From Hypanus sabinus (taxonomy: Eukaryota), in contig NC_082706.1 in assembly GCF_030144855.1 (NCBI RefSeq), forward strand, positions 115,382,001-115,446,000: a DNA stretch of 64,000 nt, written 5' to 3'. Each line of letters begins with the position of its first letter. Position 1 is the stretch's first letter. Under the pieces are notes generated by a model, which did not search any database, was not told the DNA's origin, and saw nothing but the letters and a program-made list of their open reading frames with translations. Below, piece by piece: positions 10,955 to 28,215 of this stretch. Made by a program: the position numbers and the translations under genes.

Positions 10955-11258
10955 CTGCTAAGTCCCATGTCATCTTTGACTCACAGCTTATGCATGGTGG
11001 AACCCTGTGCCTTCCAAATTGCTTCCAGAAATTGCCGCTCTGCTGTCATCCCTGCCGGTATTCTTTTCCAATCAATTCTGGCCAACTCCTCTCTCAGGCT
11101 TCTATAATTCTCTTTACTCCACTGTAATACGGATACATATCACTATTGCTTCTGCTTCCCAAATTTCAGGGTGAATTTGAAAATGATTACTGCCCCTCAG
11201 GGTTCTTTTACCTTAAGCTTTCTAATCAATTCTGGTTCATTGCACCACACCCAATCCA
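10955..11258 (-). mobile_element. CR1 endonuclease-region fragment (one half, split by the Rex1-like LINE)
   Basis: Minus strand LDWVWCNEPELIRKLKVKEP.G.S.H-like APE endonuclease C-terminal motif; continues at 18980. Confidence 0.7.
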
Positions 11259-12249
11259 AGATTCAATATTCAAAAACTTTATTGTCATTCCAACCATACA
11301 TCAGCTCTGCAGGGCAGAATGAGACAGCGTTTCCCAGGGGCAAGCGCAAACATAACATAACAAACGCAACAAATAGGAAACACAACAATAAATAGTAAAA
11401 CACAACAGCCACATGTCGGTTAAAATCAAGTTATAAGTGTCCAGTGCAAGTTAAAAGTGTCCAAAGCAGAGTCAGGTAGAGCAGCTATTTAGCAGTCTGA
11501 CTGCCTGTGGGAGGAAGCTGTTTAGTAGCCTTGTGGTTTTTGTTTTTATGCTCCTGTAACAATTTGCCTGATTGCAGAAGAACATACAGTTCATGGAGAG
11601 GGTGTGAGGGGTCTTTAATGATGTACCGTGTCTTCTGGAGGCATCGACTCTGAAAGAGGTCTTGGACAGAAGGTAGGGAGACCCCAATAACCTTCTCTGC
11701 TCCCCTAACCACCCTCTGCAAGGCTTTTTTGTCGGCAGCACTGCAGCTGGTGTACCAGGCTGTGATGCAAAAGGTCAGCACACTCTTAACCACAGCTCTG
11801 TAGAATGTAGTTAAGATGTTAGTGAGGAGTGATGCTTGTTTAAGTTTCTTCAGAAAGTGCAATCTCTGCTGGGCCAGTTTCACAATCCCAGTGGTGTTCC
11901 TGGACCTGGTGAGATTGTCTGAGATCTGCACCCCAAGGAACTTGATGTTTTCCACTCTCTCCACTGTGGAGCCGCTGATGCTGAGGGGTGTGTGCTCAGG
12001 CTGAGACTGTCTGAAATCGACGATCATCTCCTTGGTTTTGGTGACATTAAGCATCAAGTTGTTGTCACTGCACCAGCTCTCTAGTTGTTTGACCTCCTCC
12101 CTGTACATTGTTTCATCATTTTTGCTGATGAGCCCCACCTCTGTGATATCATCAGCAAATTTAATGATCAGGTTCCCCTTGAATCTGGCTGCACAGTCAT
12201 GTGTTAGCTGTGTAAACAGCAGTGGGCTGAGCACACAGCCTTTTTTTTT

Positions 12250-12575
12250 AAAGATTAAAGATGAGCTTTATTTGTCACATGTACATTGAAACACAGTAAA
12301 ATGCATCATTTGTGTCAAAGACCAGCGCAGTCTGAGCATGTGCTGGGGGAAGCCCACAAGTGTCACCACACTTCCAGCACCAACACAGCATGTCCACAGT
12401 TTACTAACCCTAAGCCTGTATGTCTTTTGAATGTGGAAGGAAACCAGAGCACCTGGAGGAAACCCACACGGTCGCAGGACAAACCCGCAAACTCCTTACA
12501 GACAGAGGCAGAATCAAACACAGGACGGCAACGCTGGAATGGTTTTGTGTTAACCGCTACGCTGCCACACTGCCC
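12250..12575 (-). mobile_element. tRNA-derived V-SINE
   Basis: Minus-strand 5' GGGCAGTGTGGCAGCGTAGCGGTTA (A-box-like), V-domain core GGGTTTCCTCCAGGTGCTCTGGTTTCC, AATAAA and ATCTTT-type tail. Confidence 0.8.
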
Positions 12576-12747
12576 ACATAATTACACAATGGTGCTGCCA
12601 AGACACGGTGACATTTGTGGGCATCAGGGAAAACTACCATGAAATATACTTTCTCAGGACTCCGATCACTGTAATCCACAACTGTAGTTCCCTTTTGGAG
12701 CAGTGCTTTTAAACCAGCTGGACAACCTAACGTTTTTTGTAGTATCC

Positions 12748-13799
12748 TTTTTTTTTTGAAAACTTTTTTTATTACGTTTTTAAATGATTACAGAGTAAAG
12801 TATGGAAAAAAAATGTTTATAACCCTTCCCCCTCCCCTTAACCTCTCCCCCCTAACTTCCCTATAAAAAAACAAAATACCCCCCTACTAATTTTTGATTT
12901 TGATCATCTTCAGATCTTGGCCTTAAGGCTCTGTGCACCCTTTCAATCTCAATTGAAGTTTCTTCTCCCATTTCCAATTTTTTAGGGATCCATTTTTGAA
13001 AAAAGTTTATTGGGTATCTTCGGTATCTTCTTTAAGTCCAACAATTTTAATATTATTGTGTCTACTAAAATTTTCAAGCTTATCAATTTTTTCCACAAGT
13101 TGTTTTCTTTCTGATGTCCAGGCATTATTATCATCTTCCATTTCCTTCATTCTTCCACCCATATCTTCCATTTTAATTTCCAAATCTGTAATTTTCTTTT
13201 CCATTTTTTCCTGTTTCTTTGTCATTTTATCAAACATACTATTTTTTCTTAATTATTTTTGGTTACTTTTAATGCTTTTAATTTTTCTAATTTATGCATT
13301 ATTTGCCTCAAAGTCTGTTTTGTATCTTCAGAGGAACTTTCATCTCCATCTTCGTCTGATTTTTCCAGAGAATCTGACTCTCTCTCAGATTCACTTTCAC
13401 TTTCGGTTTCAGTCGCAGCTGAGATTTGTAGTTCTGGTTGCTCTCATTTGCGCATGCTCGTTCCTTTACGCTTGCGCAATTCTCGTTGATCTTGTCCTTT
13501 AGAAATGGCCGATGCTGCCGCAGTTTCCTGTTCTGTTTCGCCGGTGATGTATTGTACCTGAGTCCGCGGTTCTTCGGTAGAAGTAGGCCTTGATTCTGTT
13601 CCAACTTGAACTGTCTTCACGGTAGTACTTTTCTTCGTCCTCTGTTTATGAAGCATAGCTTAAAACAATCGGAGTAGTTTATAAGTAACCTTAAGAAAGT
13701 ATTGACTAACTTTTCTTCACTTAAACATTAATTTATTGATTTTTTACGGGAGAGCTGGGTTCCAGCGTCTCGATCCTACGTCATCATGTGACGTCCCCC
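12748..13799 (-). mobile_element. internally deleted L1 (5' UTR + partial ORF1 + short 3' UTR + polyA; no ORF2)
   Basis: ORF1p coiled coil followed by LENFSRHNNIKIVGLKE and, after a frameshift, IEIERVHRAL; AATAAA then A-tract at 12748-12757 (T on plus); 5' end GGGGGACGTCACATGATGACG abuts TSD. Confidence 0.85.
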
Positions 13800-14136
13800 G
13801 AGCACACAGCCTTGTGGGGATCCAGTGCTCAGTGTGATGGAGTCCGAGATGTTCCTGCCAACACGGACTGACTGTGGTCTCTCTGTCAAGAAATCCAGAA
13901 TCCAGCGACACATGGCAGTGTTAAGGCCAAGCAACGACAGTTTCTCCACTAGTCTCTGCGGGATGATGGTATTGAATGATGAACTGAAATCAATGTACAG
14001 GATTCTGACATAAGTGCCTTTATTATCCAAGTGACAGAGAACTGTGTGCAGTGTGGTGGATATTGCGTCCTCTATAGAGCGGTTGGGACGATAAGCAATC
14101 TGTAGAGGATCCAGCGATGAGGGGAGGCTGGCTGTG

Positions 14137-14353
14137 TGATGCACCATCAATAACTCTCTCTGAGACGTAAAGGCCAGATATCGGCTTTTATTGACGGGAA
14201 GAAGGAACAAGCAGTGAGTGACCATCATACTACATCCTGGAGACTGAGCGGCCGGGGTCAGGCCTCAATCGCCTTTATACCGGGGTCTGTGGGAGGAGCC
14301 ACAGGAGCAGTCAGCAGGGGGCGTGTCCAGGCAGGTATATGTAGTTCACCACA
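14137..14353 (-). repeat. 3' LTR (217 bp)
   Basis: About 11 substitutions + 1 indel versus 18350-18567 by eye; preceded on the sense strand by PPT AAAGGGGGGGTGAA (14354-14367). Confidence 0.95.
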
Positions 14354-14414
14354 TTCACCCCCCCTTTGTTTTAAAAAGAGAGTCCCCAAGTGGCGAAGTT
14401 TCTTACAAGTATAT

Positions 14415-17400
14415 TTACAGGTTAAGTCTATCAGGTGGTCGAATCTGTCGCTGCGATCTACGTAGCACCGGCTGTGATTGCACAGGAGCCGGTGGTGATT
14501 GCACCAGAGACGGAGATTGTGCTGGTTCCGGCCTAACTGGAGGTGTCAGCCCACTAGGCGTCAGTGATCCCTCACGCGTGTGTGAGGTGCCTGGTATATA
14601 CGCGTACGAGATGCCTGGTATAGGAGTGTTGTGAGGGGTCTGTGTAGGGCTTGGTGTGCGTGGTGTCACCTCGGGTACAGGGTTCATAGTTACCGTGGAG
14701 TGTTCGGGGTAGTGTTCTGCTGCTCCTGCAGGCACCAGGTCACGGACGGAGACCATATCCTCCCGCCCATCAGGTAAGACCACGTAGGCATACTGGGGGT
14801 TCGCATGTAGAAGGTGAACCCTCTCGACCAGCGGGGAGTATTTATTGCTCCTCACATGTTTCTGGAGCAGCACTGGCCCTGGGGACATCAGCCAAGCTGG
14901 TAGGGTGGTCCCAGTGGCAGACTTCCTGGGAAAAGAGAATAGGCGCTTGTGAGGGGTGGCATTGGTGGACGTACATAGCAGGGAGCGGAGAGAGTGGAGT
15001 GCCTCGGGGAGGACCTCCTGCCATCAAGAGACTGGCAACCCTTTTGACTTAAGGGCTAAAAGTGTGGTCTTCCACACTGTGGCATTCTCCCTCTCCACCT
15101 GTCCATTTTCCCGGGGATTATAACTCGTGGTCTGACTAGTAGCAATGCCCCTAGCCAGCAGGTACTGGCGCAGCTCGTCACTCATAAAGGATGACTCTCT
15201 ACCACTGTGGATATAGCAGGGATATCCGAACAGAGTGAAGAGCTGGCGCAGGGCTTTTATGACGAACGTGGTAGTGGTGTCGGGGCAGGGGATGGCAAAG
15301 GGGAACCGCGAGTACTCGTTGATAATATTGAGAAAATAGACATTGCGGTCGGTGGAGGGAAGGGGGCCCTTAAAGTCAACACTCAGTCGCTCAAAGGGGC
15401 GGGTGGCCTTGACAAGTTGCACCTTTTCAGGATGGTAGAAGTGCGGTTTGCACTCAGCGCAGTCTTGGCAGTCCCTGGTCATCGTCCTGATGTCCTCCAG
15501 GGAGTACGGCAGGTTCCGGGTTTTCACGAAATGGTAAAATCGCGTGACCCCCGGGTGGCAAAGATGTGCATGGAGGGCGTATAGCTGGTCAAGCTGTGCG
15601 CTAGCACATGTTCCCCGGGATAGGGCATCAGGGGGCTCATTGAGCCTTCCAGGCCGGTACAGGATATCATAGTTGTAGGTGGAGAGTTCTATTCTCCACC
15701 GCAGAATTTTATCATTTTTGATTTTGCCCCGCTGTTGGTTGCTGAACATGAACGCAACTGAGCACTGGTCGGTCAACAAGGTGAACCTTTTGCCGGCGAG
15801 ATAGTGCCTCCTGTGCCTAATAGCCTCCACTATGGCCTGGGCTTCTTTCTCCACCGCGGAGTGCCGAATTTCAGAGCCTTGAAGGGTACGAGAAAAGAAT
15901 GCTACTGGCCTGCCTGCCTGATTAAGGGTAGCAGCCAGCGCGAAATCGGAGGCGTCACTCTCTACTTGGAAGGGAATGGTCTCGTCCACCGCATGCATCG
16001 TTGCTTTGGCAATGTCCCCTTTAATGCAGCTGAAGGCCACGCAGGCCTCAGCAGAGAGGGGAAAAGTGGTAGACTTGACCGGGGGCGTGCCTTGTCTGCG
16101 TAATGGGGGACCCATTGGGCGTAATAGGAAAAGAAGCCCAGGCACCGTCTGAGGGCTTTGAGGGTGGTGGGAAGAGAGAGTTCTAACAGGGGGCGCATCC
16201 AGTCGGGATCAGGGCCAATGACCCCGTTTTCCACGACATACCCAAGGATAGCGAGTCGGGTGGTTCCGAACACACACTTGTCCCTGTTATAAGTAAGGTT
16301 CAGGGCTTCGGCCACTTGGAAAAATCGTTGGAGGTTGGTGTTGTGATCCGACCAGTCGTGACCACAGATGGTGATGTTATCCAGATAGGGAAATGTGGCC
16401 TTCAGTTGGCACTGGTCCACCATCCGGTCCATTTCCCTCTGGAAGACCGAGACACCATTTGTGACACCAAATGGGATGCGCAAGAAGTGATAGAGCCTGC
16501 TGCCCGCCTCGAAGGCGGTGTAGGGGCGGTCCTCTGGGTGGATGGGGAGCTGGTGATAAGCGGATTTCAGATCTATTGTCGAGTACACCTTGTACTGAGC
16601 TATCTGGTTGACCATATCTGCGATGCGGGGTAGGGGGTACGCGTCAAGCTGCGTGAACCTATTGATGGTTTGACTATAGTCCACAACCATCCTATTTTTC
16701 TGCCCGGTCCAAACAACAACCACCTGGGACCGCCAAGGGCTTGTGCTTGGCTCAATGATCCCCTCCCTGAGCAGCCGCTGCACCTCTGACTGAATGAAGG
16801 CCCTGTCCCCCGTGCTGTACCTTCTGCTTTTAGTTGCCACAGGTTTACAGTCGGGGGTCAGGTTGGCAAACAGCGGTGGGGGAGGGATCTTGAGGGTGGA
16901 GAGGCTGCAAGTGGTGTCAGTAGCGCAGCTGTCGGCATGGTGTTGGGTGGGATGTGTGGTTCGGTGTGTGTGTGTGTGTGGTCAGTAGCTGGGTATATGA
17001 CGAAGTCCCACAGAACTGAGGATTCCTGACAGTGAGTGGTGGGAGGGGCCCGTCAAATGCCATAGTCACACTTTCGAGGTGGCTCTGGAAGTCCAGCCCC
17101 AATAGCACAGGTGCGCACAGTTGAGGCATGATCAGTAGCGCAAAGTTCTGATATTCTGTGCCCTGCACCACCAATGTTGCTACACAACCCACCCGGATGT
17201 CTGTGGAATGCGACCCAGAAGCCATGGTGACCCTCTGGCATACCGGCTGTGTCACGAGTCCGCAGCGTTGCACTGTGTCCGGGTCAATAAAACTCTCAGT
17301 GCTGCCCGTGTCAAACAGGCAGCTAGTCCTGTGCCCCTCCACCAGGATGTCCATCATTGACCTTGCAAGCTGGTGTGGGGCGCTTTGGTCAAGGGTTATG

Positions 17401-26379: not shown

Positions 26380-28215
26380 CAGGTGCCAAGAAACATCAAA
26401 GCTAGCAAGTTGGCAGGGAATTAGTGTTGAAGAGGATAATCTGGGTGTTCCCAAATCAGAAAGCATGGATACATGAGAAGGAAGGTCTCTCCTTATTGAA
26501 GTGGTGTTCAAATGAGGTGACTCTGACCTGTACAAAAACAAATCAAGATATGACTTCCATAAAACCATCAGAGATGTCCAGAGAGAATGCAAGTTCAAAA
26601 TCGAGACCCTGACCAGACAACAGTTGTGGCAGGGCTTACAGACTACAGAACAAAACTTGGGTAGCATCGCCAACAACAGCTCAACCCTTTCCACAGGTTT
26701 TAACATATTCTATACATGTTTTGAACAGAAGGAGATTGGAATTTCACCATGCACCCCAACAGCCCCCATTGCACCTTTGCAGATGTAAGATTATTTTTCT
26801 GGAGAGTGAAGCAGTTGAAAGTATCTGGCCCAGGTAGTGTCGCAGGTCATGCTCTTAGATCCTGTGCAGGTCAACTGGCGGGGATATTTGCAGATATTTT
26901 TAATTTCTCTCTACTTCAATTGAAGGTCCCATCGAAGACCACTATCACTCCAGTATCTAAGAAAACAAGGTAAGGTGCCAATAACTGCTGCCTGGTAGCT
27001 CTGAAATCCACCACCATGAAGTGCTTCAAGAAGCTGATCAAAGCATGCATTAACTCCATTCTCCCAGACAATCTCGACCTTCTGCCATTCTGAAACAGCT
27101 CTATGCTGGACACCATCTCCCTAGCCCTATGACTCTCACTGGAGTATCTGGACTATAAAGACACCTATTTCAGGCTATTGTTTATTGATGACTTCTCTGC
27201 CTTCAGTACTATAATTCTAAGCAAACTGTTCTCCAAACTCCTGGGCCTGAGCTCAACACGTCACTTCGTAACCGATCTGACTAACAGATCGCAATCAGTA
27301 AGGGCAGGCAGCAATACCTCTGCCGTTATTCTCGATACTGGTGTCCCCCAGCCCCGACTTCACTCCTTGTACACTCATAACAATGTGGCCAGATTCTGCA
27401 CTGATTCCATCTACAAGTTTGCCCTCGTGGCCTGAATCTCAAGTAGCAATGAGCCAGAGCAACATGCTGTCATAAAAACAACCTTTCCCTCAATGTCAGC
27501 AAAATAAAAGAGTTGCTTGTTGAAATCGGGTTGCCATGGTAGAGTGGTTGTTAGCATGACACTATTACAGCATGGGACGTCCCAGAATTCAGAGTTCAGT
27601 TCCAGTGTTGTCTGTAATGGAGTTAGTACTTTCTCTCCGTGACAGTGTGGCTTTCCTCTGGGTGCTCCAGTTTCCTCCCACAGTCCAAAGACATACCAGT
27701 TAGTAAATTCACTGGTCATTATAAATTGTCCCGTGATTCGGCTACTGTTCAATAGGTGGGTTGCTAGGCGTGTGCTTGTTAGGCTGGATGGGCCTGTTAC
27801 TGGCCATACCTCTAAGTAAAATAAAATAAACAAACAAATAAATAAGGAAATGGGGGAGGGGCGCATTCACATGCTCCTATTTACAGCAATGGTGCTGAGG
27901 TCGAAAGGACTGATAAGAGATTGCACTACCTAGATAGGAACATCAGCAAGAGCCTGTCCTGGTCCAAACAAGTAGACACCACAGCATCCCTGCATCCTCA
28001 GTAGGCTAAAGAAATATGGCACATCCCTGTGGACCCTTATCAATTTTTATTGATGCATCCGGATTCATCACAGTTTGTTATGGTAACCACTCTGCCCATG
28101 ATTGCAGGAAACTGCAGAGAGTTGTGGACACAGCTCAGCACATCACATCACATCATGCAGTCTCATCTCTAGGTCTACGCTTCTTGCTGCCTCAGTAAAG
28201 CATCAACGTCACCAA
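26380..28215 (+). mobile_element. Rex1/Babar-like LINE, decayed ORF
   Basis: QLAGIFADIFNFSL, VALKSTTMKCF, LFIDDFSAFSTI, LHSLYTHN..IYKFA, RKLQRVVDTAQHIT. Confidence 0.85.
27528..27845 (+). mobile_element. V-SINE inserted in the LINE
   Basis: tRNA-like head, core TTTCCTCTGGGTGCTCCAGTTTCCTCCCACAGTCCAAAGAC, A-rich (AAAT)n tail. Confidence 0.8.

What the first reader, a model, noticed from the sequence alone, without database searches (positions are those of the whole stretch)
12229..13813. Probable L1 3' transduction carrying a SINE, by an ORF2-less mini-L1
Seen: a 14-bp TSD GAGCACACAGCCTT (12229-12242, 13800-13813) splits the host RT motif QGCVL/SPLLF. On the minus strand it encloses: L1 5' end, partial ORF1, AATAAA + A-tract (12757-12748), about 170 bp of unrelated sequence, a whole V-SINE, and a second A-tract (12249-12241) downstream of the SINE's AATAAA. 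Inference: the source L1 read through its own signal, was polyadenylated at the SINE's signal, and about 500 bp of donor flank was copied here. 3' transduction is well known in mammals but little documented in fishes, as far as I know.
Basis: partly seen in the sequence, partly recalled or inferred. Interest (0 to 1): 0.72.

Follow-up and report, generated by a model that had tools for sequence, protein, structure and literature searches.

The report
Stingray L1 carrying flank and SINE
A crippled L1 jumping gene in a stingray genome was copied into another jumping gene together with about 500 bases of its old neighbourhood, including a SINE. This is a clean example of "3' transduction", a mechanism already well known in mammals.

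Summary
An exact 14-bp duplication (12229-12242 and 13800-13813) brackets a 1,557-bp insert. Removing the insert restores a 390-codon, stop-free reverse-transcriptase frame in the host LINE.

On the minus strand the insert has five parts:
- an L1 with a decayed, truncated ORF1 and no ORF2;
- the L1's own AATAAA and A10;
- a 172-bp spacer;
- a complete SINE with a conserved core;
- an A tail 17 nt after the SINE's AATAAA.

Contigs from three related organisms show that the L1, the SINE and the host LINE are high-copy, while the spacer is essentially single-copy. In each organism one contig holds spacer and SINE head contiguously at 96-97% identity. Each contig stops matching exactly at the L1 A-tract and continues into about 290 nt of unrelated DNA. 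So the flank and SINE came from a separate locus, the composite is not a high-copy family, and no part has its own duplication.

3' transduction is the best reading (about 0.72). It is not proven: the donor L1 next to the spacer was not seen. It is absent at that locus in the three relatives, and the window's own genome could not be searched. A template-switch or RNA-ligation chimera remains possible.

This is a known mechanism in a new host. The scan holds another unchecked note of an L1 3' transduction in this genome (s1-216727).

The parts
13800..13813 (-). Upstream copy of the target-site duplication (AAGGCTGTGTGCTC in element sense)
   Evidence: Exact 14-bp repeat; the only repeated 14-mer in 4 kb.
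13657..13799 (-). L1 5' UTR. It starts with GGGGG and CRE-like TGACGT motifs.
   Evidence: Sequence. High contig depth in relatives, and one contig's match ends exactly at 13799 (record 30). The ATG of the ORF1 remnant is at 13656.
12897..13659 (-). Decayed, C-terminally truncated L1 ORF1. It keeps the N-terminus, the coiled coil and the first part of the RRM, and is split over three frames with a TGA at 13446-13444.
   Evidence: tblastn to stingray ORF1 models P0001 and P0003 covers 13659-12897 in three frames. The 81-aa piece hits P0001 at E 1.5e-31. The family profile hits human LINE-1 ORF1p 2YKP at E 3e-18. Intact relatives continue past ..DDQN.
12758..12896 (-). L1 3' UTR-like segment with a G-rich tract and the L1's own AATAAA (12773-12768)
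   Evidence: Sequence. High-copy in relatives, and other copies end at 12748 or 12757 (records 21, 22).
12748..12757 (-). Internal A10, the A-tail of the L1 unit
   Evidence: In another L1 copy the similarity stops exactly at 12748 (record 21).
12576..12747 (-). 172-bp low-copy spacer, the part of the carried flank that is not a repeat
   Evidence: Depth is 67/29/50 in this bin, against thousands to hundreds of thousands in neighbouring bins. At 12629 there is one contig per organism. No other copy in the window. No poly(A) signal inside.
12250..12575 (-). Complete SINE: tRNA-like head, conserved central domain, and a tail with AATAAA (12272-12267) and TCTTT motifs
   Evidence: Hundreds of contigs share 12293-12473 and diverge on both sides. 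A second SINE at 27524-27800 shares the head and core but not the 3' half. The head is contiguous with the spacer in relatives' contigs.
12243..12249 (-). Terminal A-tail. The run has 9 As in all, and the last two are also the first two bases of the TSD.
   Evidence: It starts 17 nt after the SINE's AATAAA.
12229..12242 (-). Downstream copy of the target-site duplication
11485..12228 (-). Host LINE, C-terminal part of its RT ORF (downstream of the insertion)
   Evidence: RVT_1 profile positions 125-205, plus a match to Pfam family ALKBH8_N.
13814..14228 (-). Host LINE, N-terminal part of the retained RT ORF (upstream of the insertion)
   Evidence: RVT_1 profile positions 34-125. In frame with the downstream part.

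Best explanation
One L1-type retrotransposition event (target-primed reverse transcription) inserted a single RNA into the RT gene of a young host LINE.

The RNA started at the 5' end of a non-autonomous L1 that has no ORF2 and a broken, truncated ORF1. It ran through that L1's own AATAAA and A-tract, continued for 172 nt of unique flanking DNA and through a same-sense SINE, and was cleaved and polyadenylated about 17 nt after the SINE's AATAAA. Because the element encodes no working protein, an autonomous L1 must have supplied the proteins in trans.

Shown:
- a single insertion with one TSD;
- the L1 identity of ORF1;
- the canonical L1 3' end at the internal junction;
- a unique spacer;
- spacer and SINE contiguous at another locus.

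Inferred:
- that a donor L1 sat directly upstream of the spacer in this species' lineage;
- that transcription read through from it.
For: - Single event: there is one exact 14-bp TSD, the host frame is restored on excision, and no internal TSDs exist. Seventeen contigs of host-family copies in relatives skip the insert to within 10 nt (joint 12240->13822).
- L1 identity: the ORF1 remnant is 76-87% identical to stingray ORF1 models. The family profile hits the human and mouse L1 ORF1p structures. The sense strand is 41.7% A.
- Junction: the internal junction is the L1 family's normal end. Another copy's similarity stops at 12748 (record 21).
- Carried flank: it is unique and comes from elsewhere. 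One contig in each of three organisms (543-553 nt, depth 9-13) covers 12490/12502-12747 at 96-97% identity. Each stops fitting exactly at 12747 and runs on 285-307 nt unlike the window.
- Poly(A) signals: no AATAAA or ATTAAA lies between the L1's signal and the SINE's, and the tail begins 17 nt after the latter.
- Architecture: foreign sequence 3' of a full 5' L1 end is the transduction layout. Known L1 chimeras carry the foreign RNA 5' of an L1 3' part (bioRxiv 10.1101/2025.02.02.635956).
- General knowledge: weak L1 poly(A) signals are often bypassed, which is what produces transduction (PMC5381506 citing Pickeral 2000).
Against: - The donor was not seen. In the three related organisms the spacer-SINE locus has no L1 at the junction. 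A lineage-specific or polymorphic donor L1 must therefore be assumed.
- The contig alignments stop at 12747 without taking in any A. The presumed donor target would begin GGAT, a poor match to the A-rich start usual for L1 targets.
- The element has no working ORF, so mobilisation must have occurred in trans. In mammals this is inefficient.
- No RNA contig of the one probable RNA run covers the spacer (X15).
Confidence: 0.72

Rival explanations
1. Chimeric retrocopy made from two RNAs. Reverse transcription began on the poly(A) of a Pol II transcript that started at the spacer and ended at the SINE's signal. It then switched template onto the poly(A) end of a separate mini-L1 RNA, or the two RNAs were ligated beforehand. 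No donor L1 next to the spacer is needed.
For: - The source locus in three relatives has no L1 beside the spacer, and similarity ends sharply at 12747, as an RNA 5' end would.
- An A-tract sits at the fusion point.
- There is one TSD for the whole block.
- Template switching and RNA ligation are documented for L1 (PMC2104539 listed).
Against: - Known chimeras have the opposite polarity: foreign RNA at the 5' side and a usually 5'-truncated L1 at the 3' side. Here the L1 is complete at its 5' end and lies 5' of the foreign part.
- It needs two rare steps: trans-mobilisation of a non-L1 RNA, and then a jump precisely onto an L1 tail.
- From my own knowledge of human L1, such chimeras are far rarer than 3' transductions.
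- The spacer is absent from the probable RNA run.
Confidence: 0.12
2. The L1-spacer-SINE block is a composite element that is itself amplifying in this species, comparable to SVA or a transduction lineage. The window would then hold one copy of several rather than a one-off.
For: - The block has an L1 5' end with promoter-like motifs and a SINE 3' end with a working poly(A) signal.
- Unchecked first-reader notes report several ORF1-only L1 derivatives in this genome.
Against: - The spacer is about single-copy and not joined to L1 in three related organisms.
- There is no second copy in the 64-kb window.
- Copy number in the window's own genome is untested.
Confidence: 0.06
3. Nested independent insertions: the SINE or spacer-SINE arrived first and the L1 later, or the reverse. 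The shared TSD would then be coincidental.
For: Nested repeats are common in this window. The host LINE itself lies next to a Gypsy element.
Against: - Neither L1, SINE nor spacer-SINE has its own flanking repeat; the best shared word is 5 nt.
- Spacer and SINE are already contiguous elsewhere.
- The one 14-bp TSD sits exactly at the L1 5' end and after the SINE tail.
Confidence: 0.03

Closest known systems
L1 3' transduction in mammals (Moran 1999; Pickeral 2000, PMC310862; Goodier 2000). The first and third are cited from my own knowledge; the second is taken from the reference list seen.
   Same: - One TSD encloses the L1 plus downstream flank.
- The L1's own signal and A-tract are kept internally.
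- A second poly(A) tail follows a downstream signal.
- The carried sequence is unique and maps elsewhere.
   Different: - The host is a stingray.
- The carrier is a doubly defective, non-autonomous L1.
- The terminating signal is supplied by a SINE.
- The donor locus with its L1 was not observed.
HAL1 (half-L1), ORF1-only non-autonomous L1 families of mammals (Smit 1999; Bao and Jurka 2010, PMC2923044; summarised in PMC5753468)
   Same: An L1 derivative without ORF2 that keeps L1 ends and must use L1 proteins in trans.
   Different: - HAL1 encodes an intact ORF1p and forms families.
- Here ORF1 is cut inside the RRM, lacks the C-terminal domain (CTD) and has a stop and frameshifts.
- Family status could not be tested.
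SVA 3' transductions and other transduction by non-autonomous elements (from my own knowledge)
   Same: A non-autonomous retroelement transcribed by Pol II reads into its flank and is mobilised in trans by L1.
   Different: The element type is different, and no evidence was found of repeated rounds.
U6/L1, Alu/L1 and mRNA/L1 chimeric insertions (bioRxiv 10.1101/2025.02.02.635956; PMC2104539)
   Same: Two unrelated transcribed sequences, in the same orientation, inside one TSD with a terminal A-tail.
   Different: The polarity is reversed. Here the L1 is 5' and complete at its start, and the foreign part is at the 3' end.

Membership tests
L1 (LINE-1) element | ORF1p of the coiled-coil / RRM / CTD type | tested here: met
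   The remnant aligns to stingray ORF1 models over 13659-12897. The profile of that family hits LINE-1 ORF1p 2YKP/2YKO at E 3e-18 and mouse 2LDY at E 6e-16. Only the coiled coil and the first part of the RRM are present. Pfam on the fragments alone gave nothing.
L1 (LINE-1) element | ORF2 with endonuclease and reverse transcriptase | tested here: not met
   No ORF2 sequence lies between 12897 and the 3' UTR-like segment. It is therefore an L1 derivative, not an autonomous L1.
L1 (LINE-1) element | AATAAA plus A-tail at the 3' end, a variable-length TSD, and an A-rich sense strand | tested here: met
   AATAAA at 12773-12768 and A10; a 14-bp TSD; 41.7% A.
L1 3' transduction | One TSD pair encloses the L1 plus extra 3' sequence, with no internal TSDs | tested here: met
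L1 3' transduction | The extra sequence begins exactly at the L1's canonical 3' end or A-tract | tested here: met
   Another family copy ends at 12748, and the source-locus contigs end at 12747 (records 21, 5, 20, 28).
L1 3' transduction | The extra sequence is unique and present at a second (source) locus | tested here: met
   One contig per organism at 96-97% identity, with spacer depth far below that of the repeats. This was seen in relatives, not in the window's own genome.
L1 3' transduction | The source locus carries the progenitor L1 directly upstream of the transduced sequence | tested here: inconclusive
   In three related organisms the locus has no L1 there. The window's own genome could not be searched (all blank).
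L1 3' transduction | A second poly(A) tail placed after a poly(A) signal in the carried sequence | tested here: met
   The SINE's AATAAA is at 12272-12267 and the tail starts 17 nt later. There is no earlier signal.
HAL1-like ORF1-only L1 family | Intact ORF1 and many copies sharing the same ORF2 deletion | tested here: not met
   ORF1 is truncated at about 12897, has a TGA at 13446-13444 and uses three frames. No sibling with the same breakpoint was found, although that search was weak.
V-SINE superfamily | A conserved central domain shared by SINEs with different heads and tails | tested here: met
   824 and 609 contigs (organism A) share 12293-12473 and diverge at its two edges. The second SINE at 27524-27800 shares the core at high identity but not the 3' half.
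V-SINE superfamily | Match to the published V-domain consensus | not testable with these tools
   No SINE library is on hand, and the papers read print no consensus. The resemblance is recalled from memory only.
V-SINE superfamily | tRNA-derived head with A and B boxes | tested here: inconclusive
   ARAGORN and Rfam find nothing. Box-like motifs are visible in 12575-12510 and are shared with the second SINE.
Template-switch / ligation L1 chimera | Foreign RNA at the 5' side, L1 3' part at the 3' end | tested here: not met
   The order here is L1 then foreign. Definition taken.

The most novel reading that the evidence does not exclude
The block is more than a one-off. It joins an L1 5' end that can drive transcription to a SINE 3' end that supplies efficient polyadenylation and perhaps better recruitment of the L1 machinery. 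On this reading it is a newborn composite non-autonomous retrotransposon in a cartilaginous fish, caught at its first or first few copies. It would be an SVA-like birth, with the spacer as its diagnostic tag.
Probability: 0.06. Interest if true: 0.55.

Novelty: new member of a known kind. Interest (0 to 1): 0.3.

Why it matters
If the reading is right, it shows three things about a stingray genome:
- L1 read-through and flank shuffling work in a cartilaginous fish as they do in mammals.
- L1 proteins there can mobilise a protein-less L1 RNA in trans.
- A SINE's poly(A) signal can end a Pol II transcript.

The unique 172-bp tag would let the donor element be traced, which gives a direct handle on which L1 loci are active in this genome. 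None of this changes current understanding; it extends a textbook mechanism to another vertebrate lineage.

Tried and rejected
- Pfam on the ORF1 fragments gave only coiled-coil noise. ORF1 identity was settled through a full HMMER search and a family profile against PDB sequences.
- Rfam and ARAGORN on the insert found nothing.
- BLAST of the L1, spacer and SINE within the window found no second copy, apart from a SINE core at 27609-27696.
- All routes to the donor or source locus DNA failed:
  - our-findings search by sequence;
  - exact-protein look-ups of three window ORFs;
  - word searches with the spacer-spanning ORF and with the ORF crossing the ORF1/3'UTR breakpoint;
  - a metagenome pattern scan.
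- Metagenome contig L001 matches only 13238-13039 and says nothing about the deletion.
- A literature search for a printed V-domain sequence failed.
- Rejected readings: a high-copy composite consensus, and independent nested insertions.
- Splicing as the cause of the ORF1-3'UTR deletion could not be judged without a full-length family member.
- The joined host protein was only checked for frame and stops in a script. It was not sent to any search.

Full report
**1. Observation**

The 14-mer GAGCACACAGCCTT occurs at 12229-12242 and 13800-13813. It is the only 14-mer repeated within 11001-15000; shuffles give a mean of 0.025.

The flanks, read on the minus strand, are two halves of one non-LTR reverse-transcriptase gene. 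Pfam RVT_1 stops at profile position 125 on one side and resumes at 125 on the other. Joining them with one repeat copy gives 390 codons without a stop, reading ..SPQGCVLSPLLF... The host LINE is therefore young, and a 1,557-bp insert (12243-13799) was placed in it with a 14-bp target-site duplication (TSD). Seventeen contigs of host-family copies from three related organisms skip the insert to within 10 nt (joint 12240->13822).

**2. Anatomy of the insert (minus strand)**

- 13799-13657: a 5' UTR beginning GGGGG, with two TGACGT-like motifs.
- 13659-12897: ORF1 remnants in three frames.
- 12896-12758: a G-rich, 3' UTR-like segment with AATAAA at 12773-12768.
- 12757-12748: A10.
- 12747-12576: a 172-bp spacer.
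- 12575-12250: a SINE, with AATAAA at 12272-12267.
- 12249-12241: an A run whose last two bases are also the start of the TSD.

**3. Is it an L1?**

Pfam sees nothing in the short fragments. A full HMMER search with the 81-aa piece finds stingray proteins: P0001 from Hypanus sabinus at 84% identity and E 1.5e-31, and P0003 from Hemitrygon akajei. A profile of nine family members hits the crystal-structure sequences of human LINE-1 ORF1p (2YKP/2YKO, E 3e-18) and mouse ORF1 (2LDY) over the coiled coil, RRM and CTD.

The window's remnant aligns to these proteins from the start codon to ..DDQN at about 12897. Intact relatives continue ..PRSILIKCLRYQ.. for about 100 more residues. So the element lacks most of the RRM, the CTD and all of ORF2.

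It also carries private lesions. There is a TGA at 13446-13444 where nearly all family contigs have CGA. There is a frameshift near 13014-13019, where most contigs have 1-4 extra letters. Small deletions lie around 13239-13290. The sense strand is 41.7% A. In sum it is an L1 derivative that can encode no functional protein.

**4. Is the composite a family, or nested insertions?**

I laid contigs of three organisms (coded A, B, C) and one probable RNA run on 11400-14600 at 85% likeness or better.

- *Depth.* The host LINE, the L1 parts and the SINE have summed depths of thousands to hundreds of thousands. The spacer bin 12577-12683 has 67, 29 and 50, and 0 in the RNA run. At 12629 exactly one contig per organism covers the position.
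- *Source locus.* That contig (records 5, 20, 28; 543-553 nt; depth 9-13) matches 12490/12502-12747 with 8-10 differences (96-97% identity). It begins at a contig end inside the SINE head, stops fitting exactly at 12747, and runs on for 285-307 nt unlike anything in the stretch. So spacer and SINE are contiguous at a low-copy locus elsewhere, and in those organisms no L1 adjoins the spacer.
- *Absence of the retrocopy.* All three contigs carry C at 12629 where the window has G, and no second contig exists. The window's retrocopy is therefore absent from these organisms. The best run holds only 33% of the stretch's words, so none of them is the window's own sample.
- *L1 end.* Another L1 copy (record 21) matches 12851-12748 and then diverges. 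This places the family's normal 3' end, A-tract included, exactly at the internal junction.
- *No internal TSDs.* No direct repeat longer than 5 nt flanks the L1 alone, the SINE alone or spacer plus SINE.

The high-copy-composite reading and the independent-insertion reading are thereby rejected.

**5. Mechanism**

On the element's sense strand there is no AATAAA or ATTAAA between the L1's own signal and the SINE's. The final A-tail starts 17 nt after the SINE's signal. That is what a Pol II transcript would show if it started at the L1 5' end, bypassed the L1 signal and used the next available one. The target (AC|AAGG in sense) has the purine run after the nick that L1-type endonucleases prefer. 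The 14-bp TSD and the A-tail fit target-primed reverse transcription by an L1 supplied in trans.

This is the architecture of L1 3' transduction. Weak L1 signals that are often bypassed are described in PMC5381506, citing Pickeral 2000.

**6. What is not shown**

The decisive observation would be a donor L1 directly upstream of the spacer in the window's species. It could not be made. Exact-protein look-ups, word searches with ORFs spanning the spacer or the L1 breakpoint, a metagenome scan and the scan's own index all came back blank.

In three relatives the locus lacks the L1. That fits a lineage-specific donor, but it fits the main rival equally well. In that rival, reverse transcription starts on a spacer-SINE transcript and switches onto the poly(A) end of a mini-L1 RNA, or the two RNAs are ligated first.

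- *Against the rival.* Catalogued L1 chimeras have the foreign RNA 5' of a usually truncated L1 3' part (bioRxiv 10.1101/2025.02.02.635956). Here the polarity is the reverse. Such events are also, to my knowledge, far rarer than transductions.
- *For the rival.* The source contigs do not extend into the A-tract at all, so a donor target would have begun GGAT, which is not A-rich.

I put transduction at about 0.72, the chimera at 0.12, an amplifying composite at 0.06 and nested insertions at 0.03.

**7. The SINE**

It is complete, starting GGGCAG at 12575, and has a tRNA-like head that ARAGORN does not call. Hundreds of contigs share 12293-12473 and diverge at both edges. A second SINE at 27524-27800 shares the head and core but not the 3' half. 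This is the behaviour of a SINE with a highly conserved central domain. The V-SINE name itself rests on my memory of the V domain, because no reference consensus was available.

**8. Comparison and novelty**

The closest known thing is mammalian L1 3' transduction. The carrier resembles HAL1 in lacking ORF2 (PMC5753468), but it fails the HAL1 test of an intact ORF1.

Earlier unchecked notes from this scan report another L1 3' transduction (s1-216727) and several ORF1-only L1 derivatives in this same stingray genome. Such events may therefore be recurrent here.

I found no paper on L1 transduction in fishes, but the mechanism is general and a specialist would not be surprised. Verdict: a real, well-formed, probably single-event 3' transduction. 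It is a new member of a known kind, of modest interest.

Noticed in passing
window 12250-12277 (minus strand): The SINE tail combines AATAAA with two TCTTT motifs just before the A-tail. From memory, this layout defines the 'T+' class of L1-mobilised mammalian SINEs, whose Pol III transcripts are polyadenylated. If it is typical of this stingray SINE family, it would point to L1 as the family's partner.
   Followed up: no
window 13770-13799 (minus strand): The L1 5' end starts GGGGG, followed by two CRE-like TGACGT motifs around a CACATG core. This is a candidate internal promoter.
   Followed up: no
window 14182-14502: Contig depth in the relatives is extreme here (up to about 2 million summed). 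There are many 'goes back 35-36' joints at 14282-14317, indicating a very high-copy repeat with a variable short tandem duplication.
   Followed up: no
window 12791-13325: The probable RNA run X15 (a related organism) has contig depths of 1,700-39,000 over the L1 ORF1 and 3' UTR parts. The host LINE has 25-330 and the spacer 0. This suggests the L1 family is expressed. The RNA label is the tool's guess.
   Followed up: partly
P0001, P0003, P0024, P0029, P0030: RefSeq-type gene models in Hypanus sabinus and Hemitrygon akajei contain L1 ORF1 sequence. Their names include tRNA-specific adenosine deaminase 1 isoform X3, FAM133-like, syntaxin-binding protein 6 isoform X1 and SIN3-HDAC complex-associated factor. 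These are likely annotation artefacts or exonised L1 pieces.
   Followed up: no
window 27524-27800 (+ strand): A second SINE shares the head and the conserved central domain with the SINE in the insert but has a different 3' half, ending in an A-rich (AAATAAA)n-like tail.
   Followed up: partly
L001:13-212: A 1.1-kb contig from an ENA metagenome assembly (ERZ23499179) carries stingray-type L1 ORF1 sequence at 91.5% identity to 13238-13039. This indicates host DNA in that metagenome.
   Followed up: no
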